The notes under the pieces: model-generated
What the model was told of the DNA's origin: nothing
Database searches by the model: none
What the model saw: the letters and a program-made list of their open reading frames with translations, nothing else
Shown here: positions 653-47,528 of the stretch, piece by piece
Layout: the number at the start of each line of letters is the position of its first letter
Position numbering within the stretch: position 1 is the first letter of the stretch
Translations under genes and position numbers: made by a program
Source: Mantamonas sphyraenae STR306
Lineage: Eukaryota; Protista; CRuMs
Assembly (NCBI GenBank): GCA_026936335.1
Contig: JAPMXV010000056.1
Location: 62,001-126,000 of the forward strand
DNA length: 64,000 nucleotides
Direction of reading: 5' to 3'

Positions 653-772
653 AAAATGGAATCCAGCATCGTTTCTTCTCGCTCACTCCCTTCATCCAAC
701 ATTGCCGTGCGTTTGATCCTCGTGTCAGCAGTGACGTTTGCATCCGGGCAACTGGCACATGTCTGTTGAAAT

Positions 773-2486
773 TCAAAAGTTCTGGGCCTGCTGCTGGGCA
801 AACGTAAAGCCTACGGCCGCTCCTCCACACAAGCTGAGAGGCCATGCGATGATGATGGGCAGTAGTGCCTCGGTGTAGGAGATATCAAGCCCAGTCTCGA
901 GCTTGAGAGCATAGAGGAGACACGTGAGCGGGCCTGGCACGGCGATGACAAGGAATCCCACACAGCTCTCGAGGCTCCGAAGCCACGCACAGAGCACTTG
1001 TGGCGAGGCCAGGACAAACAACAGAAAGGCTGGAATGCACACATACCAGAAGCTGTTGATGTGGCCGTCCAGGTAGACGGCCAGGACAATGGCAAAGGCG
1101 CCAAACGTTTGCAATGCCAGCCAGTTTGTGCAGTCGCTGAGTACATCATTGATCAGCACCGTGCCCAAAGTTTCAAACCTCTGCGCGGTAAAGGCGGCGG
1201 CAATGAGGCATGTGAAGCAGCACCAAAGACCGAGCCAGATGAACAACGGAACAAACACCTCGCCCCAGGATGCCTGCATGAGGCCATCGGCCTTCAAGGC
1301 GGCCAGCATGGGAAACAGGATGAGCATGGATGCGAAAATGGGTGCGGTGCAGCAGTGGCTGGCAATGCGCGTGCAGTAGCCTGCGCAGTCCTCGTCGGCA
1401 ATCTCCAGCTCCTGCCGCATGAATCCATCCCAAAAGGCAATGAACAAGCAGATTGGCGGTGTGGCAAAAATGTACGTAGGGGTAATGAGGGCGGACCACG
1501 ACGTGTCGCTGAGCACCTCGTTGCCGTCTGCCTTGAGGCCCAGTAGGAGCACTTGCACAAGAGGCAACATGGCATAGCCAAAGAGGAACACGGCAGCACA
1601 AACACTTCCCAGAACCTCAAAGGTGCAGACTCTGTCTGAACACACGCCCAAGCAACGCAGGCAACGAGCACGGGCCGAGTTGTACTCCACCTCGGCGGCG
1701 ACGCGTTCTGCCTCCTCTTCTTCAGCACGCTTCCGGGCCACAAACGCGTCCCGGTAGCGGTGGCGCCAGTTTACAGCGTGGTCAAAGGCAGGATAGTCAA
1801 AAGAGGAGGTGGGCGCGCTGCGGTTGTTGGCGGCGAGAATGTGGCCAATTGCTCCACCCGTGTCCATGGCCTTGAAGGCTTGCGGGTCGGCGGTGCCGTA
1901 CAGCTGCATGAGCAGAGAAATGTCTGCAACAAGCCCCTCATAGGCAGTGTCGTGGTTGGAAGCACTGCCAGGCCCAGATGCGGCCTGATACGGCACGTCG
2001 TTGGAGTATCCAGGCTGCGTGGACGAGCCCGTGTTGGAGCTGCCTGCTGCAGCTGCATCTGCTGGAATCGGCACGACGTTCTCCTCGGCCACAGAGCCAC
2101 GGTTGAGCATGCGGATTACGTACAGGTTGTACCACAGGCGGTTGTCCCAGGAGATGCTGTTGAAGAGTTTGCAGGTCTGCGAGAGGGAGGCCAGATCGCG
2201 GAGCGAGGAGTCGGCGACCTTGTGGGCAATCATGAGGAGAACCTCGGGTGGCAACCAGGCAATGGGACACCGTTCAAAGTCCTGGGTGTCTGTGAGGTCG
2301 AGGGAGGACGTGCTCCAGTACTGCTGCTCCAGCGGGCTTGTGTCGCCGAGCAGAGTCAGACGCGTCGTCTTCGTCGTCTTCGTCGTCGTCGCGGATGCTG
2401 AGGGACACACTGGTGTCGTTGATGGACGCCGAGTTGCCCGCGAGCAAGGGCGTAGAGGAGGAAGAGCGGTGTGTCCTGCCACTCAT
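773..2486 (-). CDS. F-box protein fused to a TMEM185/TMEM60-like multi-pass membrane domain; frame break near 2358
   Basis: F-box motif LPPEVLLMIAHKV...LASLSQTCKLFNSISWDNRLW. Repeated 'LKADG...SW..(L/V)..P' membrane units are typical of TMEM185-family proteins. The likely N-terminus (ATG 2486, MSGRTH...DDDEDDEDDAS) is in a different frame from the body. Confidence 0.7.
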
Positions 2487-2572
2487 GGTCGTCCCTGGGT
2501 GGCTGGGGGGGCGGAATTCGCAGTGGCTTGTGTGGCGCAGGTGAGCCAACCTTTTGCACAGCTACTGTAACC

Positions 2573-4561
2573 ATGCCCAATCGTGGCAAGAAGCTGAGTC
2601 GCAACCAAAAACGTCGATTGCAAAAGAAGCTCAAGAAGCAGGAGGAAGACGTTGCGCGGCAGCTGGAAGCGCAGCGGCAGCTGGCAGCCCTGCAGGAGTC
2701 GATGGATTCACTTGAGAGCGACCACAGGAAGAGTGGGGAGGGCCATGCCACAGAGTTGGGTGCCAAGCCACAGGGAGTGCAGGTTGAATATGTAACGAGT
2801 GAGGTGGAGGTGCCCAAAGAGCTGGCAGATGCGTTTGCGAGCGTTGTGAAGAGCTTTGGCGTCGAGGACGAGGGCGAAACGGAGGTGGGTTGCGCTGCTG
2901 CTGCTGATCGGTCAGCCTGTGTGGGACGGCATGCTCTGCCAAACCGGCTGCGTGTGGGAAATCTTGTACAAGACCCAAAGGATTGGATGGGAAGGGGTGT
3001 TGTTGACGCGAGACACGCTTGTGGTTCAGGGCAGGGTGGGTCGGGCGGAAGACGCGCGCTTTCGTTCATGCACTGACACAGCAACGCGACGGGGAAACCA
3101 CAGAGCACAGAGGCAGGCCGAGGAAAGCGAGAAGAGGAGGAGGAAGACGACGGGAATGCATCGGACATGAGCAATTCGGACGGGGAAGAGGAGGACGGTG
3201 CGTCGAAGAAGCTGTCGAATCGGCAAAAGAAGAAGCTGAGTCGGGCGAGTGTGGGGGAGCTGAAGAAGAAGGTGAGCAAGCCTGAACTGGTGGAATCGTG
3301 GGATGTGGCAGCCAGCGACCCGCTGCTGCTCGTGGAATTGAAGGCACACGAGAACGCAGTGCCTGTGCCGCGGCACTGGAACAACAAGAGCAAGTATCTG
3401 TCGCGCAAACGGGGCTTTGAGAAGGCACCCTTTCAGCTGCCGGACTATATTGTGGCCACGGGAATCACCAAAATGCGAGATGCATTGAACGAGGCACGGG
3501 ATGAGCAGACGTCGAAGCAGAGGCAACGCGATCGGGCACGACCCAAGATGGGACGCATGGAAATCGACTATCAGGTTCTCCACGACGCGTTCTTTCGCTA
3601 TCAAACGAAGCCCAAGCTGACGCACCATGGCGACCTGTACTATGAGGGCAAGGAGCTGGAAGCCAAGGAGCACAAATCGAAACCGGGCGTTCTGAGCGAA
3701 GCGCTGCGCGAGGCTCTGGGCATGGTGGACGGTGCTCCGCCGCCGTGGTTGACCAACCAACAGCGATACGGACCTCCACCGTCGTACCCCAACCTGAAAA
3801 TCCCGGGTGTGAATGCACCGCTGCCACCGGGGGCACAGTGGGGTTTTCACGCAGGTGGCTGGGGGAAGGCACCTGTGGACCACATGGGCAACCCGCTGTA
3901 CGGCAACGTGTTTGCGTCGGCCGACGATGATCTGTACGACGAGCACGTGGACAAGTCCCACTGGGGGGAGCTGGAGGAAGAGGAATGGGAGTCGAGCGAA
4001 GACGAAGACAGTGCAAGCGAGGACGAAGACGAGGACGGCGACCAGGACCAAGAAGAAGCTCAACACGGGGACGACGACGAGGGCGACGAGGACGTAAGTG
4101 GCATGACAAGCACAGGGGCCGCCATGGAGACAGAGGCCGGGTCGTTTGATTTGCGCAAGGCGTCGGTGGCACAGCCTGGCGCAGAGGATGGACCCAAATC
4201 GCTGTACACCGTGCTGGACCAGCAGTCAACCAGAGTGGGCGGTGGATTGATGGGTTCCCAGTTCCAGTACGTCATGCCGAGTGGCGAAACCGGGTCCAGC
4301 AGAGGCAGCCGTAGCGGCGGTGGCCGCTCGGATGGAGTTGTACTCAACCTGGATGAAGAAGATTTGGCCAATCTGGACGAAGCCACCATCAAGAAACGGT
4401 ATGAGGAGCAGATGGCAGCGAATCGAGTTGGCAGCCAGCGCGAGGACCTTTCCGACATGGTGGCTGAGCACATGCGCAGCACCAATGCAAAGCGCAGGGG
4501 CGATGGAGGGGAAAGGGGTGCAGGCGAGCGTGGAGGCGACAAGAGGAGGCGTGTGGAGTGA
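2573..4561 (+). CDS. SF3B2: Splicing factor 3B subunit 2 (SAP145/Cus1)
   Basis: Motifs VPVPRHW..K.KYL..KRG.EK.PF.LP, IDYQVLHDAFF and PPPWL..QQRYGPPPSYPNLKIPG. Intron 2885-3103 (GTGGGT...CTGAC...CAG) joins in phase 0. Confidence 0.95.
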
Positions 4562-4591
4562 CAGCATCTCCAAAGAAAGTTCGAGTCAAAC

Positions 4592-5422
4592 TCATTGCGG
4601 CAACAACTCAATCCCATCGTCTTCAGTGCCCTCGTCAGTGTCCACAAGCGGCGATGATGGCGATGATGACTGTGTGACCTGCTCCTCGTCCATCTGGTCC
4701 TCCGACGGGTCGTCTTCCATGGCTGCAATCTCCTGGCCGAGGGTGCTGAGGAAGGAGCCCAGCAACTGACGCTGCTCTTGATTCAAAGCAGCCGCCAACC
4801 GACGCGCCTGGTCGTCCACGTCAATGATCAAGGCGTCCAGCATGGCTTCGGCTCGGTCTTGGATGTTCTTGGACATGTGCAACTGCAGGGTTTGCTTGAG
4901 AAGTTTGTCCGACGTCAAATCGGCCGCGTACAGGCCATGACTCGATGAAAGGGCGACCAGACGATCTGAATCTGGATGTTGCAGGAGAACAGAGCACACT
5001 TCGGCATCGCCAGCCTGGGCAGCCAGGTGCAACGCAGTGAGGCCTTCCGGAACACTTTGCAGCAGCACCTCCGCACCGCCATCCAGCAGCACTTGGACCA
5101 GCTCTGTGTTGTGCATGCCCGCTGCCAGGTGCAAAGCTGTGGCTCCGTCTGGAGACTGAACATTCGGGTCTGCCCCGTTTTCCAGCAGCCATTTTGCGGC
5201 TGCAACCTGGCCCTCTGCGCAGGCGTGCATCAGCGGCGTCCACTGCGGATCCTGCAAATCCAGCACATTTCCGTTAAGGATCTTTGCGTCCTGACCCTCC
5301 GCCATGGCCAGGGCCTCGGCAAGCAGCTCAGCAAGCGAGTCCACGTCGTCTTTGGCCGCGGCTCGACCCATTCGACCAGCCAGCTGTTCCGTCTGGCTTG
5401 GCTCTGAGATGATGTTTCCCAT
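4592..5422 (-). CDS. Ankyrin-repeat protein with a possible N-myristoylation site
   Basis: Ankyrin repeats TPLMHAC, TALHLAA (twice) and GADPN; N-terminus MGNIIS fits MGxxxS. Confidence 0.85.
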   Translation of the reverse strand: MGNIISEPSQTEQLAGRMGRAAAKDDVDSLAELLAEALAMAEGQDAKILNGNVLDLQDPQWTPLMHACAEGQVAAAKWLLENGADPNVQSPDGATALHLAAGMHNTELVQVLLDGGAEVLLQSVPEGLTALHLAAQAGDAEVCSVLLQHPDSDRLVALSSSHGLYAADLTSDKLLKQTLQLHMSKNIQDRAEAMLDALIIDVDDQARRLAAALNQEQRQLLGSFLSTLGQEIAAMEDDPSEDQMDEEQVTQSSSPSSPLVDTDEGTEDDGIELLPQ

Positions 5423-13216: not shown

Positions 13217-16200
13217 TCAAGGCTCGCCAGTGTTGTACATGGCATTGCCCTGCCAGCCACCGGTGCCCTCGTGCAAGGGGTTGTCGGTGAATGCCGCATC
13301 CGGCACCGCCTCGTGGTTGAGGATCTCTGCGTCCTTGGCTGCGCCAAAGTAGCGCAGTCCCTTGAAAGCTGCGGCGGCGCCGATCACGCCAGCTGCGGCA
13401 GCGCCCGCCATCTCGGGCACAAAGTTGTTCACCGGCTCAAAGTCGGCTGCCTTGGGCGACACCTTGACTGTGATGGTCTTGCTGTCCTCCAAAGGAGTGC
13501 CCTGAAGGCGACGGTCCGACTGCGAGAAGCCGTTGTCATTCACCGTGATCGTAATCGTCTCCTCCGTCGTCTTGTTGTCGGCCAGCTCGCCCAACACGTA
13601 AAACAGGCGCGACAGAGCCTCGTTCACGGCGGCAATGGGGCCGTTGTACACCTGCGTGTTGGCGTCGGTGGACACCACGCTCAGACGGTTGTCGCCCAGC
13701 GTCAGGTTCGACTTGGCGTTGGTCTTGGACAGCGTCAGCGTCACCTCGTGCACGCCAGAGTCCACGTCCGTGGCAGTCACGTTGGTCAGAGCAACCTGCT
13801 CGCCAACCGTCGTGCTGAACGAGTCCTTCAGCACAGTCACCACCGGTGCGTCGTTCTGTCCGCTCACAATCACAACCGTCTTCCATGGCTGCTGCGCATC
13901 CGCCACGCCGTCGTTCACCGTCCATTCGATCAGGTCGCGTCCGTAGTAAGTTGGCATCCGGCACATACATGGCACGCGTGTCTCCCGTCTCATAGCGAGC
14001 AGGGCTGCCCGTGGCTTGCAGCGGTTGGCCCACGCCGTTGGCTGCCGTGGCGTCAAACGCATGCATGCGGCCATGTGTGGGTGCCTTCAGAATCACCAGA
14101 TGCGGCGGGTTGTTGGGTCCGTCCTCGTCCACACCGTTTACGGTCAGCAGCTTGGGCGTGTCTTCAGGCGTCACCAGGAACGCCACAGGGGAGTACACAG
14201 GCAGATCGTTCACCGGGTTCACGTCGATCTGCACCTCCACCTCGGGGCTCGTTTCGATGCCGTCTGTGGCCGTGAAGCGCAGGCGCGCGTAGTCCGTGCC
14301 GTGCTCGTTGCGGCCGGCCTGGAATGTCACCAACCCCTGGTCCGAGGTCACAAGCGCAGGCGCAGACGTGATCTGGGTGCCGTCGCTCTGCATCAACGTG
14401 CAGCGCGGGCGCGGCGCCGCAAACGTCAGGCACGTGGGAACTTGCGTGATGGTCAGGTTCAGCACCGGCTGCGTGCCGGCCGGGAAGTCGTCGTCGGCAC
14501 CGTTCAACTTGACAATCAGCTGAAAGTCCTCGTCCACGCTCACCGGCGAGTCGGCAAACGCACGCGGCGGGTCCTGCACGGACGTTACGTTGATGGTGGC
14601 CGTCTGCAGCGCACTGTCCACGCCCGACGAGTCGCGCACCAGAAAGTTGAACGTCACGTAGGGAGCGCCGTGTTCGTTGGCCACAGGCTCGTAGATGAGC
14701 TTGCGTGCCGTGTTGACCACCGTCACCTCGCCCTCGGCGCTCATGTTCACCGCAGCGCCGCGCGTCACTCCGTCGGCAGCCACCTGGTACAGCTGTCCCT
14801 TGGATGGCAGCGAGTCCAGCACGGCAATCACACTGTCGCCCGTGTCGATGTCGCTACCGGGGAACGTCAGCACCACCGCGGTGTCCTCGTTCGTCACCAC
14901 GCCCACATCCTGGCTCGTGGGTGCGTCGTTCACGGGCTCCACCACCACGTTCACCTGGAATGCATCCGAGTCCAGGTTGTCGCCGTCGCGCACCTTGAAA
15001 GAGAACGACGTCAGCGGCTGTGTCGACGGGTCCGAGTGTGCGTTGGCAGGCGGCACGTACGTCACGCGTCGTGCGCCGTCTGTAACCTGGTCGTTCACGG
15101 CAAGCGGCGTGCCAGACGTGGCGGCGCCGTTGTACAGGTTGCCCTGCGCCGGTACCGCCGTGATGATCCACGTCAGGCCAGCCACTGCAGTCTCCACATC
15201 CGAGCCCTTGAGCTCCATGGTCACGTGCGAGTCTTCCAGAGTGTTCACTGGCGTCGCTGCAACCGCCGTCGGTTTGTCGTTCACAGGTGTGATCGTCATC
15301 GACGCCTGCGCAGTCGCAGACGGCGTTCCGTCGTCCACCTGGAAGCTGAATGTCTCGGCACCGTTGTAGTTGGTGTCCGGCACATACTTCAGGCGCTTGC
15401 CCAGCGGAGTGGTCGTGCTCGCCGTCACCGCCGCAGGCACGCTGGTGATCTGCGTTGTCTCTGTGCCGCTGCCGTCCACCTGGAACAGGCGGCCGTTGAG
15501 AGGCAGCTCGGTGACAGATGCGTCCATGGTGCCCGTCTGGTCGATCGACGTGCCCGTCAGCGTAATCAGGATGCTTCCGTCCTCCGACAGCGTGGCCGGG
15601 TTCGGCTGGAAGGCAGGCGTGGGCGCATCGGGCACGCTGGACACGACAATGTTCACCGTAAACGGGTCCGAGTCTTGCGTGCCTGCGTCACCGCTGTTGT
15701 CACGCACCCTAAACGCAAACGAGGCGTAGGTGGCGCCAGCAGGAGAACTGTGTGCGTTGGCGGGCGGCTTGTACCACACCTTCTTGGAAGCCACCGTGTC
15801 TGACACGGACAGCACGGCGCCGGCTGCGTTCTGCTGGCGGAATTGGCCGCCGTTGGCAGTCAGTGATGTGATGATGGCTGTGGTCGGGTTTCCGTCCACG
15901 TCCGAGCCCACCAGATCGACAACCACCTCGCCGTCCTCGACCATGACCACAGGGGTCAGGGCGCTGGCCACGGGCTTGTCGTTCACAGGGGTCACGTCCA
16001 CCGTCACGGTGGCCGGCGACGAGTAGCCAGAATCGCCGACGTCTGCCAGTGCAAACTGAAAGGTGTCGTACGAGTTGCCGTTGCCGTTGGGCGCCGGCGC
16101 AAAGATGACCTTGCCCGAGAAGCTGGCTGCGTTTGTCACAATGGTGTTTGTGGCCGTGATGGCGGCGCCACGTGCGTCGCCCGCAGTGGCTTGGTACAGG

Positions 16201-19200
16201 GTGCCCTTGGTGGGCAGGCTGGTGATGCGGAAGTTCTTGAACGCCTTGCCATCGTTGGACGAGCCGGTGATGGTGATCAGCCGGTCCGTGTCCTCGTTCG
16301 TGCTCACCGTCTGTGCGTTGGCCGTGGGCTTGTCCAGGATGCTGTTTCGCACGTTGATGGTGGTTGTGGCCACGTTGGCCGACTGGGCGCCCTGCGGGTC
16401 GGTCCAACGGTAGGTGAAGGTGTCGAACGCGTCACCAAAGGCAACCAGAGTGCTGTTGTAGATGACGCGGTTGTTGGAGTCGGTCACTGCCGTGTTGCTG
16501 CCTGTGATCTCGGCGCCACGCACGTTGCCCGTTGTCCACTGGTAGAGCTTGCCCTTGGTGCCTGGCACGCTGGTCACAATGACCGAACTACCCGGGGCGT
16601 TGGAGGCGCCCGGGCTGTCCACGTCAGTGGCACGCAGCTGGATGACGGTCTCTGCGCGCTCGTCCACGTTGACGGTCTGGTCGAGAGCCACAGGGGCGTC
16701 GTTGACCGGCGTCAGGTTAATGGGCACGTTGACCGAGGCCGACGCGACGCCGTCCTCCACGCGGAAGTCGAACGAGGCCACGGCCCCGTTGTCGTTAAGG
16801 TCCGGCACGTACATGATCTGCTTGGAGGCCACGTTGAAGGTGGCCGGCACAGAGTTGATGACGTTCCCAAGGGTGGCGCCAGTGCGCTCGCGAAGGGTGC
16901 CCTTGGCAGGCAGGGTTTCGATGACGACCTTGTTGACGGTGCGCAGGGGCGCGTCGATGCTGTTGCCGGTGAGCGTGAGCTGCAGGTTGGTGTCCTCGGT
17001 TCCCTGGGCAGGGTTCGGTGTGTAGCTTGCCGTAGGCGGGTCGATGGTGTTCTGCACGTTGATGGTCACCGTGACAATGGACGACTCTGCATTCAGGTTG
17101 TCCGCGACCTTGAAACGGAAGGTGGCGTAGTTGAGGCCAAACTCGTCCGAGTTGCTGTTGTACGCAATGTAGGCCTTGTTGTTGCTCTGGAACGTGACAA
17201 CGGTGTTGTCGCCGATGGTGGCGCCTGCGTTCTTGGTGCTGGTGCCTGTGCACTGGTACATGATGCCCTTGGCTGGAGCCTGGACGATGGTGTACGTGAA
17301 CGAGGTGCTGTCGACGTCAAAGGCGCTGAGCTCGATAAAGGCGTCAACCTGCTCCTTGACTGTGACCGGGTTTGCGGCAATGCGTGCCTGGGGCGGATCG
17401 TTGACCGGGTTGACGTTGACGCTGACAGTCTTGGAAACGCTCCACAGGGACTGGTCGTCGCGCAGCTGGTAACCGAAGCTGGTGTAGCCGTTTCCGTTTG
17501 CGTTGAGCGGGGCACGGTACTTGATGCGGCGTTGCGAATCAGTGACGGTTGTGCCCACCGAGGTGATGGGCGTGTTGTCGTATTGCATGAGGGTGCCGCG
17601 GTTGGGCAGCACACTGATGCGTGCGGTAAAGGCAGTGAATCCTTCTGGGTCGGTGCCTGTGAGGGTGCCGACAATGGTGGTGTCCTCGTCGCCCGTGATG
17701 GCGTTGAGGGTGCCCACAGGCGGGTCGGGTTTCTCGATGACGTTGACGCGAATGCGCTTGGGGAACGACGAGAGCTGGACGAGTTCAAGGAGCGAATCAT
17801 AGCTCCTGACACTCATGTAGGTGTACGGAGAGCCGCTCTGGCCGGTCACAGGCTCATACCAAAAGCGGTTGTTGTCGAGGTAGGTGCTTGTGCTTGTGAT
17901 CTGCGTGGTGCCGTCGTCCTGGTACACCTTACCCTTGGCGGGCATCTCGGTGATGCGGTAGCGGAGCGAGTTGCCGTCGGGGTCGGAGCCGGAAAGAGCG
18001 ACGCGCACGCGCGAGTCCTCGTCGACCTGTACGGTGGATGGGGCCACGACATCGGGATGCAAGTTGACGTCCACGTTGATGGTGATCAGTCCGATGCCGA
18101 GCACGCCGATGACGACCTGACCGTTGACGCGAGCACCCTTGGTGGCGTAGCCGAGCTTGATGGAGAAGGTCTTGGACGTCTCCCAAGACTGAGCCAGCTG
18201 GGTGGAAGGCTGGGGAGCCTGCATCACAAAGCCCTGCGGATCACTCTTGACGGTGGCGACAATGGACGTGCGGATGTCGTCCAGGCCACTGCGGATGGCA
18301 GAAATGAGGTTGCTACTGCTGCTGCTGAGGGTTGTGGCGGCACCAAAGCCGAGCTTGGTGACCAGGCCCTGGTAGGTGGCCAGCACATTGGAAGTGACGC
18401 AAAAGATGGGCACGATGTTGGCGTCGATCAGGGCCTGGCGGACCTGGCTGACGCTGGGATAATCCTCGTTGCTCGAAACGACTCCGTCGCCGTCGTTTGA
18501 ACGCCACGAGCTGTAGTAGCGCTTGCCATCGCCTGCCTGGTGGTAGGCGGCATCGGTGGAGAGGACAATGATGCGTCGCGAGTTTGTGCGGAAGCCCGCA
18601 GAGCTGGCAGCGCGACGGGCGACCTGCAGCAGACCGGTGAGCTGTGCCTCCGGGCTGTCACCTCCGCTCTTGACACGAAGGCCGTTGACGGCGTTCTGGA
18701 GCACGCTGGTGTAGGACGTCATGGGCACGTGCGTCTTGTACTCGTAGTCGCCGCTGCGTCCAAAGGGACTGTTGGGCTTGTCGATGTACGAGCCGAGGCC
18801 AAACCAGGCGTCGGAGTACTCCCTGCGCACGTCACGCACGAGGGCGGTGACCATGTTGCGCAGGTTGTAGAGATCATCACCGAAGGAGCCGGAAAGATCC
18901 TCGAGGAGGAAGATGTCCAGGGCGGTGGTACTCTTGGGTTGAATCTTGACTTGGAAATTCTGGGTCAGAACGGACCCGCCGGCGCTGGTGGGCTTGAGCC
19001 ACACGTTGAGCGTCTGCGGGACGAGAGCTACGCCGTTGGAAGAAGACTTGACGTAGGAGTCGGTGTTTGGGTCGACTGCAGGAGGGTTGCAAGGGGCGGC
19101 GCGGGTCAGGATAAGCTGCGCGCAGCCCAGAGGGGAAAAAAATGGGCACACAATTTTGTTTGTTGTGTGTCCGGACAAACCAAAGGGGGTTGGGGTAGAG

Positions 19201-19461
19201 ACATGCAGGCGAGACGGGGCGTGGTGCGTGTGTGTGTGTGTGTGCAGGCGGTCACAATGGGTGGGGAGGACGGGCGATGCCCGTATGCAAGTGCGTGGCG
19301 AACAGCAAGCGGGGCAGAGCAAGGCATTCACCAGCTGGGCTCCGAGCGGGGCAAAACACGCCGGAATAAGGCACCGGGTGGGGTACGAGCGACTCACCTG
19401 CACTAACAACGCCCACAAGGAGCGACACTGCAACAATCAAGACCGTGAACTTTGTGTTCAT
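13217..19461 (-). CDS. Integrin-beta-like / Sib-like adhesion receptor: signal peptide, beta-I (VWA) domain, 13 cadherin-like repeats, TM and NPxY-like tail; frame break near 13950
   Basis: Exon 1 (19461-19398) encodes the signal peptide; intron 19397-19076. MIDAS DLSGS plus FGLGSYIDKP, DSPEA, STDAAYHQAGDGK and DYPS. VND.P....ED repeats follow, then TM AGAAAAGVIGAAAAF and tail motifs NPLH/NAMY. Confidence 0.88.
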
Positions 19462-19662
19462 CTCGGTCAAAAGTTCGTTGGAGTGGGTAGGAAAAAACTG
19501 TGGACGAGCTTTCGCGTGGCATGGTTGATGATGAAGAGTGGAGGATTGGGAGGCACACATGGGGAGTGTGAGAGTGTGACGCATGTGGGAAGTGGCGGTC
19601 AACACTGCAATGTGTGCGGGGGCACTCGTGGAAGCACCGCAAACGCAGACACATCAGCAGCA

Positions 19663-21662
19663 ATGAGCAGCGCAGCACAGAGCTTTGGCATCAAGACATT
19701 TGGCGACATGCAGACGGAGCAGTACCGTCTGTTCTTCAGTACGTGGCAAAGTGTGGCACTGGGGGAAGTTGAGCGCGTTTGTGGGAAAAGGTAGCGGGGG
19801 GCTGACACAAGCACATGGTTTGACGACGGTGCGGGGTCGCAGCGAACGCTGAGGGCAAGGCCATCTCGCCTTTCCATGACATCCCGCTGGAGGCCGGCGA
19901 GGGTGTGTTCAACATGGTGTGCGAAATCCCAAAGTGGACGAACCGCAAGTTTGAGATTGCCACGGGCGAAGAGCTGAACCCGATCAAGCAGGACACGAAG
20001 AAGGGCAAGCTGCGATCTGTGGCTGACGTGCAGCCGTTCAAGGGCTACCCGTGGAACTACGGCGCGTTCCCGCAAACGTGGGAGGACCCGAGCCACACGA
20101 ACGAGGCCACACAGGCGCTGGGAGACAACGATCCGCTGGACGTTTGCGAAATCGGTGAGTTTTTTGGCAGTGGAGAAGCTCACGGCCACACGCACGAGCA
20201 CTGACACAGACAACGCCACAGGCGAGGCACAGGGATTCTCGGGCCAGATCAAGCAGGTCAAGGTGCTGGGCTGTCTGGCCATGATTGACGACGGTAAGGC
20301 GCAGGGCGGAGGAAAACTCACGGGAGGGTTTTGCTTGCGAACGGGATGAAGAGACAGTGGAGGGTGCTAACAACAACAACACAACGCACTCTTGGCGCCC
20401 ACGGATGGCGGTACCAACACACACACACACACACACACATGGGTGTACACACGCAATGGCTGACAGGTGAAACGGATTGGAAGGTGCTTGCGCTGGACGT
20501 GAACGACCCGCTTGCGAGCCAGGTGAACAACCTGGCCGACGTGGAGGAGTACTTCCCGGGCGTGCTGGAGGCCACCTACCAGTGGTTCCGCACCTACAAG
20601 ATCCCTGCGGGCAAGCCGGAGAATGCGTTTGCCTTTGACGGCGAGTGGAAGGACGTGGAGTACACGTTGGACGTGGTCAAGGAGAACAACGAGTTCTGGA
20701 AGCGTCTGATCAGCATGAGCGTGGAGGAGGCCAAGGAATTCAAGATGTGCACGGTGAACGCCACGGTGGAGGGAAGCCCGGGCCTGACCAGCGATGCCGA
20801 CGCCCTGGCAACAGGCGACGAGTTCATCGGACCTGCGGAGAAGCAGGCTGCGGACGAGCTGACCATGACGCCGAGCCTGTACACGGGTGTGCTGCAGCGC
20901 ACGTCGATGTTTGGCAACTCGGACCTGCAGAGCGTGGCGGCGTCTGTGGAGCAGGCTGTGGCGGAAGCTGTGAAGAACGGCTCGCCGAGCCAGGAGGCTG
21001 TGGTGGCCGCTCTGGATGCAAACGACGCCGTGGGCCTGATTGTGTACAACGGTGAGGCACAGGTGAGCGAGTACAACAAGGAGCGCTACGTGCAGGCCCT
21101 GCTGGTGACGGTGAACGCAGACGAGTCGTCGCTTGTGTTTGGTGTGTACGAGCGCCGTCGCACGGACCTGCAGAAGGAGGTGAGCGAGACGGAGCTGGAG
21201 GGACGCAGCGGCAAGGACTTGATCGCAGCTGGGTACAGCGTGCTGGCCAACCAGGGCGCCAACCTGGTGTTTGCGGCAGGCAAGAGCTGCCAGAACACAG
21301 GCAGCCGCCCGTCGGTGAACACGTACGTGTACGACAGCTGGCGTGAGTTGTTTGCGCTGTGCAAGACCAACCTGAGCATGTCCACGTTTGGCGGTGCCGT
21401 GGCCATCAACACCAGCATCACGGGCCAGGACGGCGTCGTCGAACTGCCGCTGGGCCACCTGGTGGCGGATGTGAACACGCTGCTGAACTGCGGTGGTGTG
21501 TACGAGCAAGCCGAGGCTGTTGTGGATCTGCAGCAGGCTGCTGTGCTGGCCTACCTGGTGCAGGGTGCCGGCGGCGACGCAAAGAGCGGTGACCAGGCCG
21601 TCCAGGACATTGCCTTTGCTGCGGGCGAGCAGAAGGTGTCGTTCACTGCAGGCAACCTGTAA
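19663..21662 (+). CDS. PPA: Family I soluble inorganic pyrophosphatase fused to a C-terminal degenerate FBPase-like domain
   Basis: Motifs [59 protein letters not shown] and GETDWK. Introns 19739-19842, 20155-20221 and 20294-20466. Confidence 0.92.
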
Positions 21663-41370: not shown

Positions 41371-42249
41371 TCATTCTGTGCCAACACCTGCACCCCCTCC
41401 TGACCCCGACCCGACCTTGCCGCTCCGCAGCGCCAGCATAGCCAATTCATCCGCATTCGGCACCTCGGCCAGCGATCTGTGAATGGCGGCCACAATCTGG
41501 GAGACCGGCACAAAGTCAAACCCGGATGACAGCGCCTGTCGGTACTCACGTGCCACCTTGACCATGCGCATGTACTTGCCAAAGTTGATCAAATCGCCAA
41601 AGAGCTCCTCCTCGCTCTGCTCCAGCGACTGCAGCTGCGACAAAACCAGTTCAAGAGGAGCCTGACACGTCTTCCACTCCCGCCCACGAATCAAGTTGCG
41701 AATGGCCTGAAAGTTGCCCCGCGACGACGTAATGTGCACCAGCGACGAGTATGCGTCCACCACCGAGGACGACCACTTGATCTCCTGCGGGTTGGCAAAC
41801 AGCTGAGCCAGCACATCCGAACGCAGCGCGTTGCCAAAAGCCATGCTTGCCTCGTAGTTGCGCATCTGGGTCACATAGCGTCCCACTTTGATCATCCTGC
41901 GCAGCTGTTTTAGTTGCGCCTTGCGACTGTTGCGCCGCACGACCTGGTGGATGACCCAACGCTGGAGCCTGTCGCCCATGCTCGCCAGATCTGCCACAGA
42001 CTGGGCGTGCAGCTCGCGCGACTTTCCATCCAGCCGCAGAGACAACAAATCCCGCTCAGACACCGCTTTTGCAAGTTCGCCCAGCAGCAGCACCCACTGC
42101 CGCGCGACCTCTTCTGCATCCACGTCGTCCACGCTCAGATGTGGCGAAAACACATTCACAGGCACCTTTGGGGTGGGTGAAGAGGCAGTTTCACCCCCTC
42201 CAAGGTCGTTGCCCAACGACAACGCTGCCATCATCATCGACGACGACGA

Positions 42250-42282
<33 letters not shown>

Positions 42283-45200
42283 CGACGCAGCAGATCCCGT
42301 CGACACCACCTGCGTCATGTTCACGCTGCCAGACGCCAACGTGTGTTCGTTTGGCAACGTGGGTGACATGGATGTCGTCCGCTCCATGTCCTTGCGGCCG
42401 TACACCAAATTGCGCAATTGTTTGGCCGTGTTGGGGCGTGCCCCTGCAATGTCTTCGCAAAAATCCAGCACGTACTGCAGCAAGCTGGCTGAAAAGTCTT
42501 TGTGATGATTCGTCAGCCACGTGCGAAGGAACGAACACACACGGATCTGCACCGGGCCAAGCACCTCGGCCCGCCATCGCTCTTCCAATCCAATGGCCAC
42601 TTCCTCGTCAGGCACAGGCATCCAGTACCGCTGCATCAGCTTGCTCATCAACTTCTCCGGTGCGCAGAAGCGTGGAAATGCAAGCAAGAACGACTGTTGC
42701 ACCTGCCGATCTTGTCGCACCGCCTCCGTGCTCATGATCACCAGCCGGTTCAGAGACGCAAAGAACTGGTTTCCTTCGCGAATGAGGCTCTCTGGGCCGT
42801 CTTTTTCCTCCCACACCGCCAAGTCACCTCGCTCCACAAACGTCACCGACAACGGCGAGCGATGGACATGCTCCCCCTCGTCCTCGTCCTCGTCGCCGTC
42901 TTCCGCACCTTCGTTTGACCCATGCAACGTCACATTCAACACATATTCGCCCACCAGAGGCGACGAGAACGAGCCGCTGTACGTGCCGTCCCCGTTGTCG
43001 ATCACCAGCGAATCTGCGGCGTCCTCTCCGTCCTCGCTGTCGTCATCGCTGAACCACCCATCCACATCCTCCTCTTCAGCGTTCAGCTGTCGCAACAACA
43101 CCATTTGCACATCCTGTCCGCCCGCATCAAGCCGATTGCCGTAGCGATCGCGGCCCACCACTTGAAAGTGAACAATGTCCCCGACCTGGAACGCTTCGCC
43201 CTTGCTCTTGGCCTTGCCGTCGCTGGTGGTCAGGGACAGCACACTCGTTGCAGCACACATAGTCCCCGGGCGCACATCCACCTGCCCCGCGCACCGGATG
43301 TGCTCGGCTCCTACCCCGCGCACGGCCACCCGCACGTCGTACCGTCCGCTCTTGAATGTGGACAGGAACACGCGGTAAAGGAAAACGGATTGCGTCTCCT
43401 GCTGCTCCTCGATCCCTTCGTCGGTGCACACTGCAACTGCCGGAGTCACAAAGCCACTGCGTGTCTCCTCTGGCCCAACAAAATCCACAATCACTCGCTC
43501 GGGTTCCACCTCGCTCTCCACACGCATCTCCAACTCCACAGCCTGTCCTGTGCATACCTCGGCCCTCTCTTGCGCCCATCCGACCACCACTGGTGTTTCA
43601 TGCGATGCGTATGTCTCCGTTTCAGCGTCGGCCCACTTGGCGTCTCGTTGTGAACGATTGCCGTAGAAGCCTCGTGGAAGACCATTCACGTCATCTACAA
43701 TGTTGATGGCACGTGTCAGCTTGCTCTCCAAGTACTGGTATCCCAGGTTGTCTGTGTGTCCCCGCCTTGGATCTGCGTGCGACCGCACATCCGATGCCAA
43801 GTCGCTCAGCCACGTTCCCAGCTCGTTTCCCCTTCCCAGCGTGATCAGAGGAACCAAAAAGTCCACACTTTTCCCAAAAATGGCCTCGTATGTGCGATAG
43901 CCACGTGTCAGGAACGCCACCGCCATGTCCCCCAACTGTTGGCGACTGGACGCCCCTGCTTCGTCCACAACCACCTCGCCAACCTCATCCACGTGTTGGT
44001 TCAGAATGTGACCCAGACGGCAGCACACTTTGCCCACCAAAGGGTGCAAATTCCCATACACGGTCTCGATCACCCGCAGCGCCTCTGTGTACCGCCCGTG
44101 CGCTTCTTTCCACTCGCCCAATGACTCGTACAACTCGCCAATCTCCACCAATGCCAACAGAGACACGCGACTGTACTCCCCCAGCACACGCACCGCCAGA
44201 TTACGGCTTGACTCCGCCTGCTGCAGCGCCAGCCGCAGCGTCTCTGTTCTCTCCTTGACGCCCACATGCTGAACTCCTGCGTGCCGATGGTTTTCTCGTG
44301 CCAGTTTCAGCAACGATTCCACGTACGCTTCACTTTCGTTGCCAAACAGATCCAACACCAGTGCATGCATGGTTTCCTGCCGCTGCACGGCTGTCCACGA
44401 TGCATCCTGATCATCTTCAGCCGCCTGAGCCTCGGCCGCTTCCACGCACGCGTCCATGAGCTCCTGCACCTGATTGTCCAATCCAATCGACTTGACCGCT
44501 GCGTCCAACACTTCCACGTCCTCCTCCTGCAGTGGAGAGGGGTCCTGGAATGCCTCGCTGTGTGCAAACAGCCGTTGATGGCATTCGGGCGAAAAACACA
44601 CGCCAGTGGCCTGCTGCAGTCTCAGGAAAAGGGCAAACTTGGGCAAGAAGGAACGAAGGTCAAATGCATCGCTGCGCTCCGTGTTTGTGAGCCCTTCCGG
44701 GAATCGCTCCTCGATGTCTCGCTTGAGGCCGCAGAAGAAGGCGTCACTGTCTGCACTCTCGCCCAGCGCCAGATTGAAAAACGCAACGGCTGCGCTTCGC
44801 AGGCTACCTTCGTCCACGGGCCGCACGGCATTCTGCTTCCGCATCTCTTGCCGCAGGCGCACGGTGCTTCGCCAGTCGATGCTGCTCATGCTGCTGTAGT
44901 TGAGGGCGGCCACCTGCGTACTGAGACCATCTTTGCCCATGGCTGCCACGACCAGACCACGGTTGGCATCACGCAACAGGCTCTGCAATCGCGCCTTGCA
45001 CACACGCGTCACCATCTCCAGCATAATCAGCTGGATGTTGTGGATGCCAGTGATGCGAGCGCGTACGCGTCCCAGGTGCCTCAGATTGATGCCCCGTCGG
45101 TGCATGTGTGCCACCAGTTGCCAACTGTCCACCGGTGCAACGTTTCGGATTTCCAGGTCTGCAGCAAACTGCTCCAGCGTCTCTTCGCGCAGACGCGCAC

Positions 45201-47528
45201 TCGCCTCCACCACCCTGTCATTGTGGATCCGTCCATTGTGTGCACACCGGTCGCCCAGATCCCCAAAACACTCTGTGCAGCATCCAAACCCCGTCAGGGC
45301 GTCTGACGACAACGGTTGAGGACACTGGGCCACAAACTCGGGTCGCAGCAGCTGGGCAAACACTCGTCCAGGCCCATGCACCAACACAGCCGGCCCAAAC
45401 ACAGCCTCGCTGTCCAGCAGCATGCTTGCATGTGGACTGAACACACGCCCATCCGGAGCGCAAACCTGAGCATCTGCATCCTCATCCTCATCCTCATCGT
45501 CTTCCTCATCCCCATCTCTCCATCCACACTGTCATCTTCGCCCCGTGTGGCCCTTCCCTCCTGGCTTCCGTTGCTCATCCCTCTCCCTCGTGTGCTGCGA
45601 TTCCCACTCAGCTTGCGTGCAGGCCGTGTCGCCCCGGAGAAACTGGCTGTCCTTGACCGTGCCAACACCACAGTCCGCTCCGACCCGTCGCTGTCGCTGC
45701 GATTCCGTGGCGACCAGTCGGCGCCCGTCAGACTGCCTCGCCGTGTTCGTCCGCTGCCCATGTCCGACGAAGACGTCATGCTTGATGTGCGTGCACGTGC
45801 CCCAACCCCGCCGGCCATCGGCGACGTCGACTCGTGCCCCTGCCCTTGCTGCACCCCCGTGCGCACCGACAGTGGCGATGTGCTCTGTAGCCCTGTTGTG
45901 CTTGTCGACCCAATTCCAATGCGCCTGCCTCGCGACTCTGTCGTCGACCTTGCACGCCTCCTTCCTGGCCGTTTCCACGCCCCTCCACCACCACCACCAC
46001 CACTGCCGCTCCCCTCCTGTCGCTCTGGCGTGTCTCCACGCCCTGTATCTTCCATCGATGACGACAGAGGCGACGATGAGTCCTCGCTCTTGCCACCCTC
46101 CTCACCGCCTGCCGCGCGTCTGCAGAAACGCAGCCCTGTCCCGCTTCCCGACAGCGACGACGAAGGCGACAGGGTTTGTCCACCAGGCTTCAATGTCGAT
46201 GACGATGATGACGATGATGACGAAGAAGAAGAAGAAGGCGACAGCAACCGGGCCGCACCGCCCGTCTCGTCCAGCGACGACGAAGCCGTGGTCATCGAAC
46301 CCGCATCTGCACTCGGTTGTGGTTTGCCCACAGGCAACTTGGCAGGCAGGAAGCACAGCAGTCCGGGCGACAACGGATTGCATCGCATCAGCTCAGCAAC
46401 CATGGCCTCATCCACCTCGGGGTGGTTCGTGTGTTGGGCAAGAAGCGACGCCACATCCCGCTTCCACCGGCGCAAATTCAGCCGCAGAGCAACAGGCTCG
46501 CGCTGCGGAAGGATCAGCCACGCCTTTGCATCGTCGCTGGGCATCTCTGCGGGCATCAGGCGAGCAACGTCCAGAAGGTAGGCCCGGTTGTCGGCTCCCA
46601 GATGCCCTTCTATGTCTCCAGGGCCGTACAGGTGGTGAAGACTGGAGCCTGACGCATGGCCACACAGGTTGAGCTGCGTGCACGCTTGTTTCACGGTTGC
46701 GTTCAATCGAGGGTTGGACGAGTGTGTGGTCACTCCGCCGTCGTGGCTCCCGTACACCAGCGTGTCACGGTTCACAGGCAGCACACTCTGCGCAATCACA
46801 CGGTGGCCACAGTAGTCCACCAGCGCCATCAGAGGAAAGTGCAGGTTGGGCGTGTTTGTCTGCAGCAGGCTCTTCAACGCTTTCAGTTCTTGGCCTGCCG
46901 CCTTGCGACTCCAGAAATCGCCCCCGTGCACTCCCTTCCGGTCTTTGGCAAACTTGAGAAACACACCGTCAAAGCAATATTTGTCGCCTCCACCAATGCC
47001 CCCCAAGGTGTGGTCCACGGGGATCCTCTTGACGTCGTTGGGCAGTCGTTCCTCCCGCACAATCACCTTGGCCAACTCCGCCGCACGCGCCTCAAACTCT
47101 TGTGACAGCGCCGAAATGGCCAGTGCCCGATTCAAACGTTCCTCTGGCGTCCTGCTGGGCATGTCCAGCAGCTTCTGGAACTCGCTGTTCCACGGCCTGC
47201 CTGTGAGTCGCAAAGCAGCTGCGAATTCGTCCTCGTCATCCCCGGTACTCGAGTCTACGAGGCCGTTCTGCACACCCAAAAGGTCAATGGATGTTCGACC
47301 AACGTCCAAGTCCCAATGCGCGGGCTTTTCGATCCCATTCCTCTGGTCCTCGTCCTCGTCCTCATCGTCGACATCGACCAGGGCGTTTGCGTACCCCGTT
47401 TGGCTCATCAATGCAGCAGGACGCCCACTCCCGTCGTCTCCATCTGCGTCCAAACTTGCTGTGCGACGCCACAACGCGCACAGTTCTTCAAACTGTCGCT
47501 GTGGATCGTCATCCGTGGACACGTCCAT
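41371..47528 (-). CDS. Clu domain - CLU-central - TPR - filamin repeats - REM - RasGEF(CDC25) multidomain protein; frame break near 45517
   Basis: Clu motifs GGIGGGDKY, FPLMALVDYCGHRVIA and GPGDIEGHLGADNRAYLLDVARLMP; then LRPEFV and MHRRGINLRHLG; filamin DNGDGTY; REM RVCSFLRTW; GEF EVARQ...LINFGK. Confidence 0.82.

What the first reader, a model, noticed from the sequence alone, without database searches (positions are those of the whole stretch)
13217..19461. Chimeric receptor: integrin beta-I domain on a stalk of 13 cadherin-like repeats, with an integrin-spaced double NPxY-like tail
Seen: the region ~18925-18280 has integrin-beta-specific motifs in the correct order (DIFLLEDLSGSFGDDL, FGLGSYIDKP, GGDSPEA, STDAAYHQAGDGK, DYPSV..V...L...NIVPIFCVT), not just a generic VWA fold. 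There is no PSI domain or Cys-rich EGF leg. Instead come 13 ~105-aa VND.P...ED repeats of the bacterial adhesin type, a Gly/Ala TM with GxxxG, and the tail NPLH-x8-NAMY. Known: integrin beta1 has NPIY-x8-NPKY, and Dictyostelium Sib proteins combine a VWA domain, bacterial-type repeats, a Gly-rich TM and NPxY motifs. Inference: this is an intermediate between integrin-beta and Sib, possibly an alpha-independent, talin-coupled adhesion or prey-capture receptor with a long reach.
Basis: partly seen in the sequence, partly recalled or inferred. Interest (0 to 1): 0.85.

Follow-up and report, generated by a model that had tools for sequence, protein, structure and literature searches.

The report
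Integrin-headed Sib-like receptor of Mantamonas
A gliding marine protist from just outside the animal-fungal-amoeba supergroup has an intact, apparently expressed surface receptor that puts a complete integrin-beta-type head on the stalk, membrane anchor and likely talin-binding tail seen in slime-mould Sib adhesion proteins, which gives a testable link between two adhesion systems whose relationship is still open.

Summary
The gene is real, and the genome is Mantamonas sphyraenae (CRuMs).

The frameshift near 13950 is an assembly error. An M. plastica orthologue (59-70% identical) runs through the site and keeps the tail. Talin is encoded in the genome.

Corrections: the head is bacterial-type (45-52% identical to bacterial proteins, at most 33% to animal integrins), and head-plus-repeat fusions exist in cyanobacteria. 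Repeats are 109-136 aa. There is no strict GxxxG, and neither tail motif is canonical NPxY.

Head and stalk score higher on Pfam's Sib models than any bacterial or animal protein tested. The best reading is a Sib-type, talin-coupled adhesion or prey receptor that kept its integrin metal sites. No Sib sequence could be fetched, so descent from a common ancestor versus separate assembly is open (AU p=0.055). Talin binding and alpha-independence are untested. The scan noted Sib-like tails on other Mantamonas genes, but not this head.

The parts
19398..19461 (-). Exon 1: start codon and hydrophobic signal peptide (21 codons plus 1 base)
   Evidence: the M. plastica orthologue P0022 has a collinear signal peptide followed by VDP
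19076..19397 (-). 322-nt GT-AG intron, phase 1
   Evidence: depth of run X3 drops to zero from 19100; the junction itself was not seen in reads
18945..19055 (-). Hybrid domain, N-terminal strands
   Evidence: AlphaFold model, pLDDT 95; Foldseek to integrin beta, TMq about 0.8-0.86 over 366-390 columns
18267..18923 (-). Integrin beta-I (beta-A) domain of the bacterial subtype. MIDAS DxSxS, Glu and Asp and the ADMIDAS Asp pair are intact; the SyMBS Asn is replaced by Gly; the 16-residue specificity loop is absent
18069..18266 (-). Hybrid domain, C-terminal strands
   Evidence: the Pfam vWA_SIBA-E match runs through this part
13862..18068 (-). Repeats R1-R12, long-type bacterial cadherin-like/Ig_SibA beta-sandwiches of 109-122 aa, median pairwise identity 28% across the 13 repeats
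13948..13950 (-). One surplus base in the assembly inside R12, where two alleles of a synonymous SNP were merged; not a real frameshift
   Evidence: table 4; the M. plastica protein is continuous across the site
13454..13861 (-). Repeat R13, a membrane-proximal cadherin-like domain of a different subtype
13364..13411 (-). Gly/Ala-rich, marginally hydrophobic membrane segment (Kyte-Doolittle 1.47), followed by Lys 27 residues before the first Asn motif in the orthologue (28 in most animal integrin beta rows)
13271..13291 (-). Proximal tail motif F-x-x-N-P-L-H (F-x-x-N-P-I-H in M. plastica), a candidate talin F3 site
   Evidence: same spacing as the PIPKI-gamma talin ligand in PMC4003243
13235..13246 (-). 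Distal tail motif N-A-M-Y (N-I-M-Y in M. plastica), 8 residues after the first
13217..13219 (-). Stop codon

Best explanation
A single-chain type I surface receptor of the Sib kind. Shown: the anatomy, an intact reading frame, conservation in two Mantamonas species, intact MIDAS and ADMIDAS residues, and a talin gene with F0-F3, rod and I/LWEQ domains. Inferred: the beta-I domain grips an acidic group on the substrate or on bacterial prey through a Mg/Mn ion at the MIDAS. Thirteen cadherin-like domains, probably stiffened by calcium, hold the head roughly 55-65 nm from the membrane (about 4.5-5 nm per domain, from my own knowledge). The FxxNPLH motif docks in talin F3, so the grip is tied to actin. 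Because the beta-I/hybrid hinge is kept, pull on the stalk could tune affinity as in integrins. It probably needs no integrin alpha chain. Origin, inferred: head and stalk come from a bacterial-type adhesin module, and the whole is more likely a distant relative of Dictyostelium Sib that kept the metal sites Sib lost than a derived animal-type integrin.
For: Fold match to integrin beta-I plus hybrid. Metal-site residues. Reads remove the frameshift, and the high-depth run covers exon 2 but not the intron. Orthologue 59% identical over 1,608 aa and 62% in the C-terminal piece, with the tail conserved. Talin, E 4e-74 to talin-2, with the KRWAA stretch of F3 kept. A His-ending motif with the same aromatic spacing binds talin F3 with Kd 0.27 uM (PMC4003243). 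Sib models: heads 63-64.5 bits, best E-value of 64 aligned heads, against 35-57 for 8 bacterial and at most 23 for 6 animal heads; stalks 226-233 bits against 0-106 for 8 bacterial stalks, where Big_9 always wins. Sib layout and talin coupling from PMC2651865, PMC9197732 and PMC12686525.
Against: No binding, localisation or knock-down data. Both tail motifs depart from NPxY, and the proximal NPXY is essential in SibA. The membrane segment is only marginally hydrophobic. No Sib sequence was compared directly, only Pfam models; the head margin over bacteria is small (64 vs 57 bits), and a bacterial protein also has 4 Ig_SibA-type repeats. The SyMBS Asn is missing. Mantamonas glides as a flagellate and M. 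vickermani is described as without pseudopodia, so an actin-based traction role is not obvious.
Confidence: 0.6

Rival explanations
1. Independent chimera. Mantamonads took a beta-I/hybrid head from bacteria and joined it to their own stock of cadherin-like repeats and NPxY-type tails. It works like Sib but is convergent with it.
For: The best head hits are bacterial, 45-52% identical. Cyanobacterial proteins already join the head to Big_9/Cadherin_4 repeats. At least 8 other contigs carry giant cadherin-like repeat genes. Gregarines carry separate bacterial-type heads, so the domain may have entered eukaryotes more than once.
Against: This gene's repeats match Ig_SibA better than the other Mantamonas giants do (4 of 6 genome matches). 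Head, stalk, anchor and tail all follow the Sib order. No bacterial sister group has firm support.
Confidence: 0.3
2. Beta subunit of an unusual heterodimer. The head pairs with one of the FG-GAP propeller surface proteins of Mantamonas, as integrin beta pairs with alpha.
For: The GDGK motif is kept; its Lys corresponds to the residue that inserts into the alpha propeller (my own knowledge). Bacterial chains hold an FG-GAP propeller and a beta-I together. Earlier scan notes list propeller receptors in this genome (not checked by me).
Against: No Integrin_A_Ig_1 match. The two FG-GAP hits scored were a DEX1-like protein and a peroxidase fusion. GFFKR-coding patterns occur at control level, 6 vs 6. 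The specificity loop is absent, and the tail has no HDR[RK]E clasp.
Confidence: 0.12
3. Cargo or prey-capture receptor whose tail is a sorting signal read by endocytic or recycling PTB/FERM adaptors rather than by talin.
For: NPxY and NxxY motifs also serve sorting (my own knowledge). In beta3 the His-type motif binds talin but does not recruit paxillin. Mantamonas feeds heavily on bacteria.
Against: The distance from the membrane (27 vs 28) and the 8-residue gap match integrin beta tails, and talin is present.
Confidence: 0.15
4. Pseudogene, bacterial contaminant or mis-assembly.
For: A frameshift in the assembly and bacterial best hits.
Against: Three runs lack the surplus base, and two hold the whole stretch in one contig. 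The gene has a spliceosomal intron, GC3 of 0.81-0.84 near the host's 0.70-0.79, eukaryotic neighbours and an orthologue in a second species.
Confidence: 0.02

Closest known systems
Dictyostelium SibA-SibE
   Same: Order of parts: VWA-type head, bacterial-like repeats, Gly-rich membrane segment, two NPxY-like motifs. Matches Pfam vWA_SIBA-E over profile positions 5-282 of 284, and Ig_SibA. Talin is available in the genome.
   Different: 13 repeats rather than 4 (PMC2651865). Keeps MIDAS and ADMIDAS, which Sib is reported to lack (bioRxiv 2020.04.29.069435). The head begins right after the signal peptide, and no other Sib-named Pfam model matched. His and NxxY tail motifs. Sib was reported only in dictyostelids.
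Canonical integrin beta (animals, apusomonads, breviates, amoebozoan type I, Rigifila)
   Same: Beta-I inserted in a hybrid domain, MIDAS and ADMIDAS, Lys after the membrane segment, tail length and 8-residue motif spacing.
   Different: No PSI, I-EGF or beta-tail domains, no specificity loop, SyMBS Asn replaced by Gly, no HDR[RK]E clasp. At most 33% identical in the head. No alpha chain found.
Bacterial beta-I proteins (Trichodesmium type; Okeania P0030, Lyngbya P0001, Rubrivivax P0012, PEP-CTERM forms)
   Same: Head 45-52% identical; many include the hybrid strands, and some carry Big_9/Cadherin_4 repeats.
   Different: Secreted or sorted by RTX, PEP-CTERM or T9SS signals; no eukaryotic membrane anchor or NPxY-type tail.
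Amoebozoan type II ITGB (Variosea; Kang et al.)
   Same: Large proteins with a beta-I head on a non-canonical, partly Ig-like stalk; their clade falls next to the Trichodesmium sequence in that paper's tree.
   Different: They carry LamG3, vWD, EGF or cyclic-nucleotide-binding domains and have variable MIDAS.

Membership tests
Integrin beta | Beta-I domain inserted in a hybrid domain | tested here: met
Integrin beta | MIDAS and ADMIDAS residues | tested here: met
   D59, S61, S63, E142, D174 and D66, D67 of the exon-2 piece align with beta-1
Integrin beta | Complete SyMBS (NxDxPE) | tested here: not met
   Asn replaced by Gly137, as in 62 of 64 bacterial-type heads
Integrin beta | PSI and Cys-rich I-EGF leg | tested here: not met
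   4 Cys in the mature chain; no such Pfam match
Integrin beta | NPx[YF]-x8-Nxx[YF] tail and HDR[RK]E clasp | tested here: inconclusive
   Spacing met; His in place of Tyr/Phe; clasp absent
Integrin beta | Heterodimer with an alpha subunit | tested here: inconclusive
   No alpha found, but the searches are lower bounds without a positive control
Integrin beta | Head groups with eukaryotic integrin beta | tested here: inconclusive
   Falls among bacterial rows; 0 of 200 bootstraps with animals; AU p=0.055; no protist integrins in the tree
Sib (SibA-E) | VWA-type head matching vWA_SIBA-E | tested here: met
   63 bits, cut-off 27; 50 of 64 bacterial-type heads also match at E 0.001, so this is not exclusive
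Sib (SibA-E) | Bacterial-like Ig_SibA repeats | tested here: met
   226 bits, 9 stretches
Sib (SibA-E) | Gly-rich single membrane segment with GxxxG | tested here: inconclusive
   Gly/Ala-rich; strict GxxxG only in M. plastica
Sib (SibA-E) | Two canonical NPXY motifs | tested here: not met
   NPLH and NAMY
Sib (SibA-E) | Loss of the three cation-binding motifs, as reported for Sib | tested here: not met
   MIDAS and ADMIDAS are intact
Sib (SibA-E) | Orthology with dictyostelid Sib in a tree | not testable with these tools
   No search returned a Sib sequence
Sib (SibA-E) | Tail binds talin | not testable with these tools
   Needs a pull-down; talin is present

The most novel reading that the evidence does not exclude
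The protein preserves the ancestral state from which both Sib and integrin beta arose. A bacterial-type beta-I/hybrid head was wired to talin through an NPxY-type tail before CRuMs and Amorphea split. Sib then lost the metal sites, and integrin beta exchanged the repeat stalk for PSI/EGF legs and gained an alpha partner.
Probability: 0.25. Interest if true: 0.9.

Novelty: new variant of a known kind. Interest (0 to 1): 0.7.

Why it matters
[quoted passage not shown] The 2020 survey found Sib only in dictyostelids. Here a lineage outside Amorphea has a Sib-shaped receptor with a full integrin headpiece, and a talin. The Sib Pfam model covers the whole beta-I plus hybrid unit, which suggests Sib's 'VWA' is a worn integrin-type head. 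The protein allows direct tests of whether a beta-I/hybrid head binds ligand and switches affinity without an alpha chain, and whether talin coupling predates Amorphea. No paper in the library holds both 'Mantamonas' and 'integrin', though most subscription papers are not searched.

Tried and rejected
The joined protein was never built or searched; only its length was added up.

An 18S search failed, so the organism rests on the assembly statistics and the M. plastica orthologue. Talin_middle found nothing, but I/LWEQ led to talin. Two exact contig look-ups and two metagenome scans were blank. Atlas feature searches gave only leads at or near the noise level. The weak DUF7743 hit on R13 (E 0.014-0.04) was not used.

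A genome search with the anchor and tail, and a twin-motif pattern search, found no paralogue; the pattern's two other hits are below control level and were not read. Cornillon 2006 and Sebe-Pedros 2010 are not held. One GC3 figure (0.635) came from a wrong frame and was discarded; the in-frame count gives 0.82.

Rejected: pseudogene, contamination, generic VWA, canonical integrin beta.

Full report
Organism. The window lies in a 25,061,354-base, 78-contig assembly. The published Mantamonas sphyraenae assembly has 78 contigs of mean length 321,299.41 and is diploid (PMC10492846); these figures multiply to the same total. The closest protein is from Mantamonas plastica. Neighbouring genes are eukaryotic: eIF4E, DNA polymerase alpha-type, RasGEF, an EH-domain protein. 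[quoted passage not shown]

Gene. Exon 1 (19461-19398, minus strand) codes a signal peptide. A 322-nt GT-AG intron follows, and exon 2 runs to the stop at 13217. The M. plastica N-terminus is collinear with this splice. The assembly has one surplus base at 13948-13950. Run X1 lacks the base at 13948, X2 lacks the one at 13950, and X3 shows both forms at similar depth, 1468 and 1337. These are two alleles of a synonymous site merged by the assembler. X1 and X2 each hold the laid stretch (13500-19480) in one contig. X3 has depth of about 700-4,800 over exon 2 and none from 19100 on. I infer it is the study's RNA run, although it is labelled 'DNA?'; exon 1 and the splice junction were not seen in it. 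The product adds up to 1,973 aa. All searches used the pieces separately; the joined model was left out.

Head. Pfam Integrin_beta scores 114-122 bits and generic VWA models 25 or less. The AlphaFold model of the first 338 residues of exon 2 has pLDDT 95 and shows a Rossmann domain inserted in a beta-sandwich. It matches integrin beta chains over 366-390 columns with TMq mostly 0.8-0.86, and 0.84-0.90 in the Atlas. So the head is beta-I plus hybrid. MIDAS and ADMIDAS residues are intact, the SyMBS Asn is Gly, and the 16-residue specificity loop is missing. These departures are those of a large bacterial family. The best hits are RTX, PEP-CTERM and cyanobacterial proteins at 45-52% identity, median 44%, against a maximum of 33% and a median of 28% for animal integrins. 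A Trichodesmium member was known (PMC3192720). Okeania-type proteins and a Rubrivivax protein already join this head to Big_9/Cadherin_4 repeats. This is the only Integrin_beta and the only vWA_SIBA-E match found in the genome; such counts are lower bounds.

Tree. With 30 bacterial-type, 10 animal and 2 Mantamonas heads, animals form one clade on a long branch (100/100). Mantamonas lies in an unresolved bacterial cluster and joined animals in 0 of 200 bootstrap trees. Forcing it with animals costs 9 log units, p-AU 0.055, which is not a rejection. No protist integrin or Sib sequence was available, so neither donor nor direction can be named.

Stalk. There are twelve repeats of 109-122 aa and a thirteenth of 136 aa. 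A two-repeat model (pLDDT 97) is a tandem beta-sandwich whose best TM among the listed matches, 0.56, is to the N-cadherin ectodomain. The conserved ND.P, ED and D.D acids suggest calcium linkers; this is inference. The repeats are about 25 aa longer than most bacterial tandem-95 repeats. Ig_SibA is the top family here, 226 bits and 233 in the orthologue, ahead of Cadherin_4 and Big_9. In eight bacterial stalk hits the order is reversed and Ig_SibA gives 0-106 bits. The heads show the same lean: the two Mantamonas heads score 63 and 64.5 bits on vWA_SIBA-E, the best E-value of 64 aligned heads; eight bacterial heads score 35-57 and six animal heads at most 23. The head margin is small, and long-type repeats do occur in bacteria (P0282).

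Anchor and tail. The membrane segment is Gly/Ala-rich and marginal (1.47; 1.59 in the orthologue). Strict GxxxG occurs only in M. plastica. The C-terminal piece is 62% identical between the species, and both keep F-x-x-N-P-[LI]-H, eight residues, then N-x-M-Y. In the fetched animal integrins the first motif ends in Tyr or Phe, the aromatic residue stands at -5, and the distance from the membrane Lys is mostly 28; in the orthologue it is His, -3 and 27. The -3 spacing with His is that of the PIPKI-gamma talin ligand WVYSPLH (Kd 0.27 uM), and a beta3 chimera carrying it binds talin and is activated but does not recruit paxillin (PMC4003243). His therefore does not exclude talin binding.

Partners. 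Talin is encoded at G000:C58, with FERM_M, PTB, IBS2B and I/LWEQ domains, E 4e-74 to talin-2, and an upstream F0-like exon. No integrin alpha was found. These searches score only the best candidates, and earlier scan notes list propeller-bearing receptors that I did not check.

Mechanism. The most likely working is a metal-dependent grip at the tip, a rod of about 60 nm, one membrane pass and a talin link to actin, serving substrate adhesion or prey capture. This parallels SibA-talin A, which bears force without integrins (PMC12686525). Anatomy, integrity, conservation and the presence of talin are shown. Ligand, location, talin binding, allostery and alpha-independence are inferred.

Comparison. 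It is not a canonical integrin beta: the leg domains, full SyMBS and clasp are absent. It works like Sib and meets the Sib head and repeat tests, but it fails canonical NPXY and keeps the cation sites that Sib is said to lack. I therefore file it as Sib-like, not as a proven Sib. Beta-I heads on unusual stalks are known in Variosea, and a canonical beta without alpha is known in Rigifila. This exact architecture and any Mantamonas integrin-like protein were not found in the paper library.

Verdict. A real, conserved, new variant that bears on a stated open question. Interest 0.70.

Noticed in passing
P0018, P0081 (bacterial-type proteins): Single chains hold FG-GAP repeats, a beta-I domain and RTX repeats: alpha-like and beta-like integrin head modules in one secreted protein.
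   Followed up: partly
P0026/P0244, P0034, P0129: Gregarines (Porospora, Blabericola, Polyplicarium) carry two or more divergent bacterial-type beta-I domains per protein; gregarines also glide.
   Followed up: partly
L041:4658-9667 (G000:C58): Mantamonas talin looks short (1,670-aa last exon plus upstream exons), lacks a Talin_middle match and ends in a Cys/His motif after I/LWEQ.
   Followed up: partly
G000 contigs C4, C13, C27, C28, C29, C32, C44, C61: Giant cadherin-like repeat genes with open frames up to 9,721 aa; some end in a membrane segment and Pro-rich tails.
   Followed up: partly
L043:4809-8258 (G000:C29): FG-GAP repeats plus ASPIC/UnbV fused to an animal-type haem peroxidase.
   Followed up: no
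P0022 vs P0243: M. plastica has a 911-aa predicted form that ends inside the stalk without an anchor; it may be a secreted isoform or a transcript assembly artefact.
   Followed up: no
window 13950-19073: Third codon positions shift from C-rich in the 5' half (C 596, G 254) to balanced in the 3' half (C 274, G 285).
   Followed up: no
window 19650-20280, + strand: An inorganic-pyrophosphatase-like gene starts about 200 bases from this gene's start codon, head to head, so the two may share a promoter.
   Followed up: no
window 41374-45444, - strand: An open frame combining eIF3_p135, TPR, filamin-type Ig and RasGEF matches.
   Followed up: no
P0209-P0216: Metagenomic proteins of 476-593 aa with beta-I, most with PSI, and no cytoplasmic-tail match; source unknown.
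   Followed up: no
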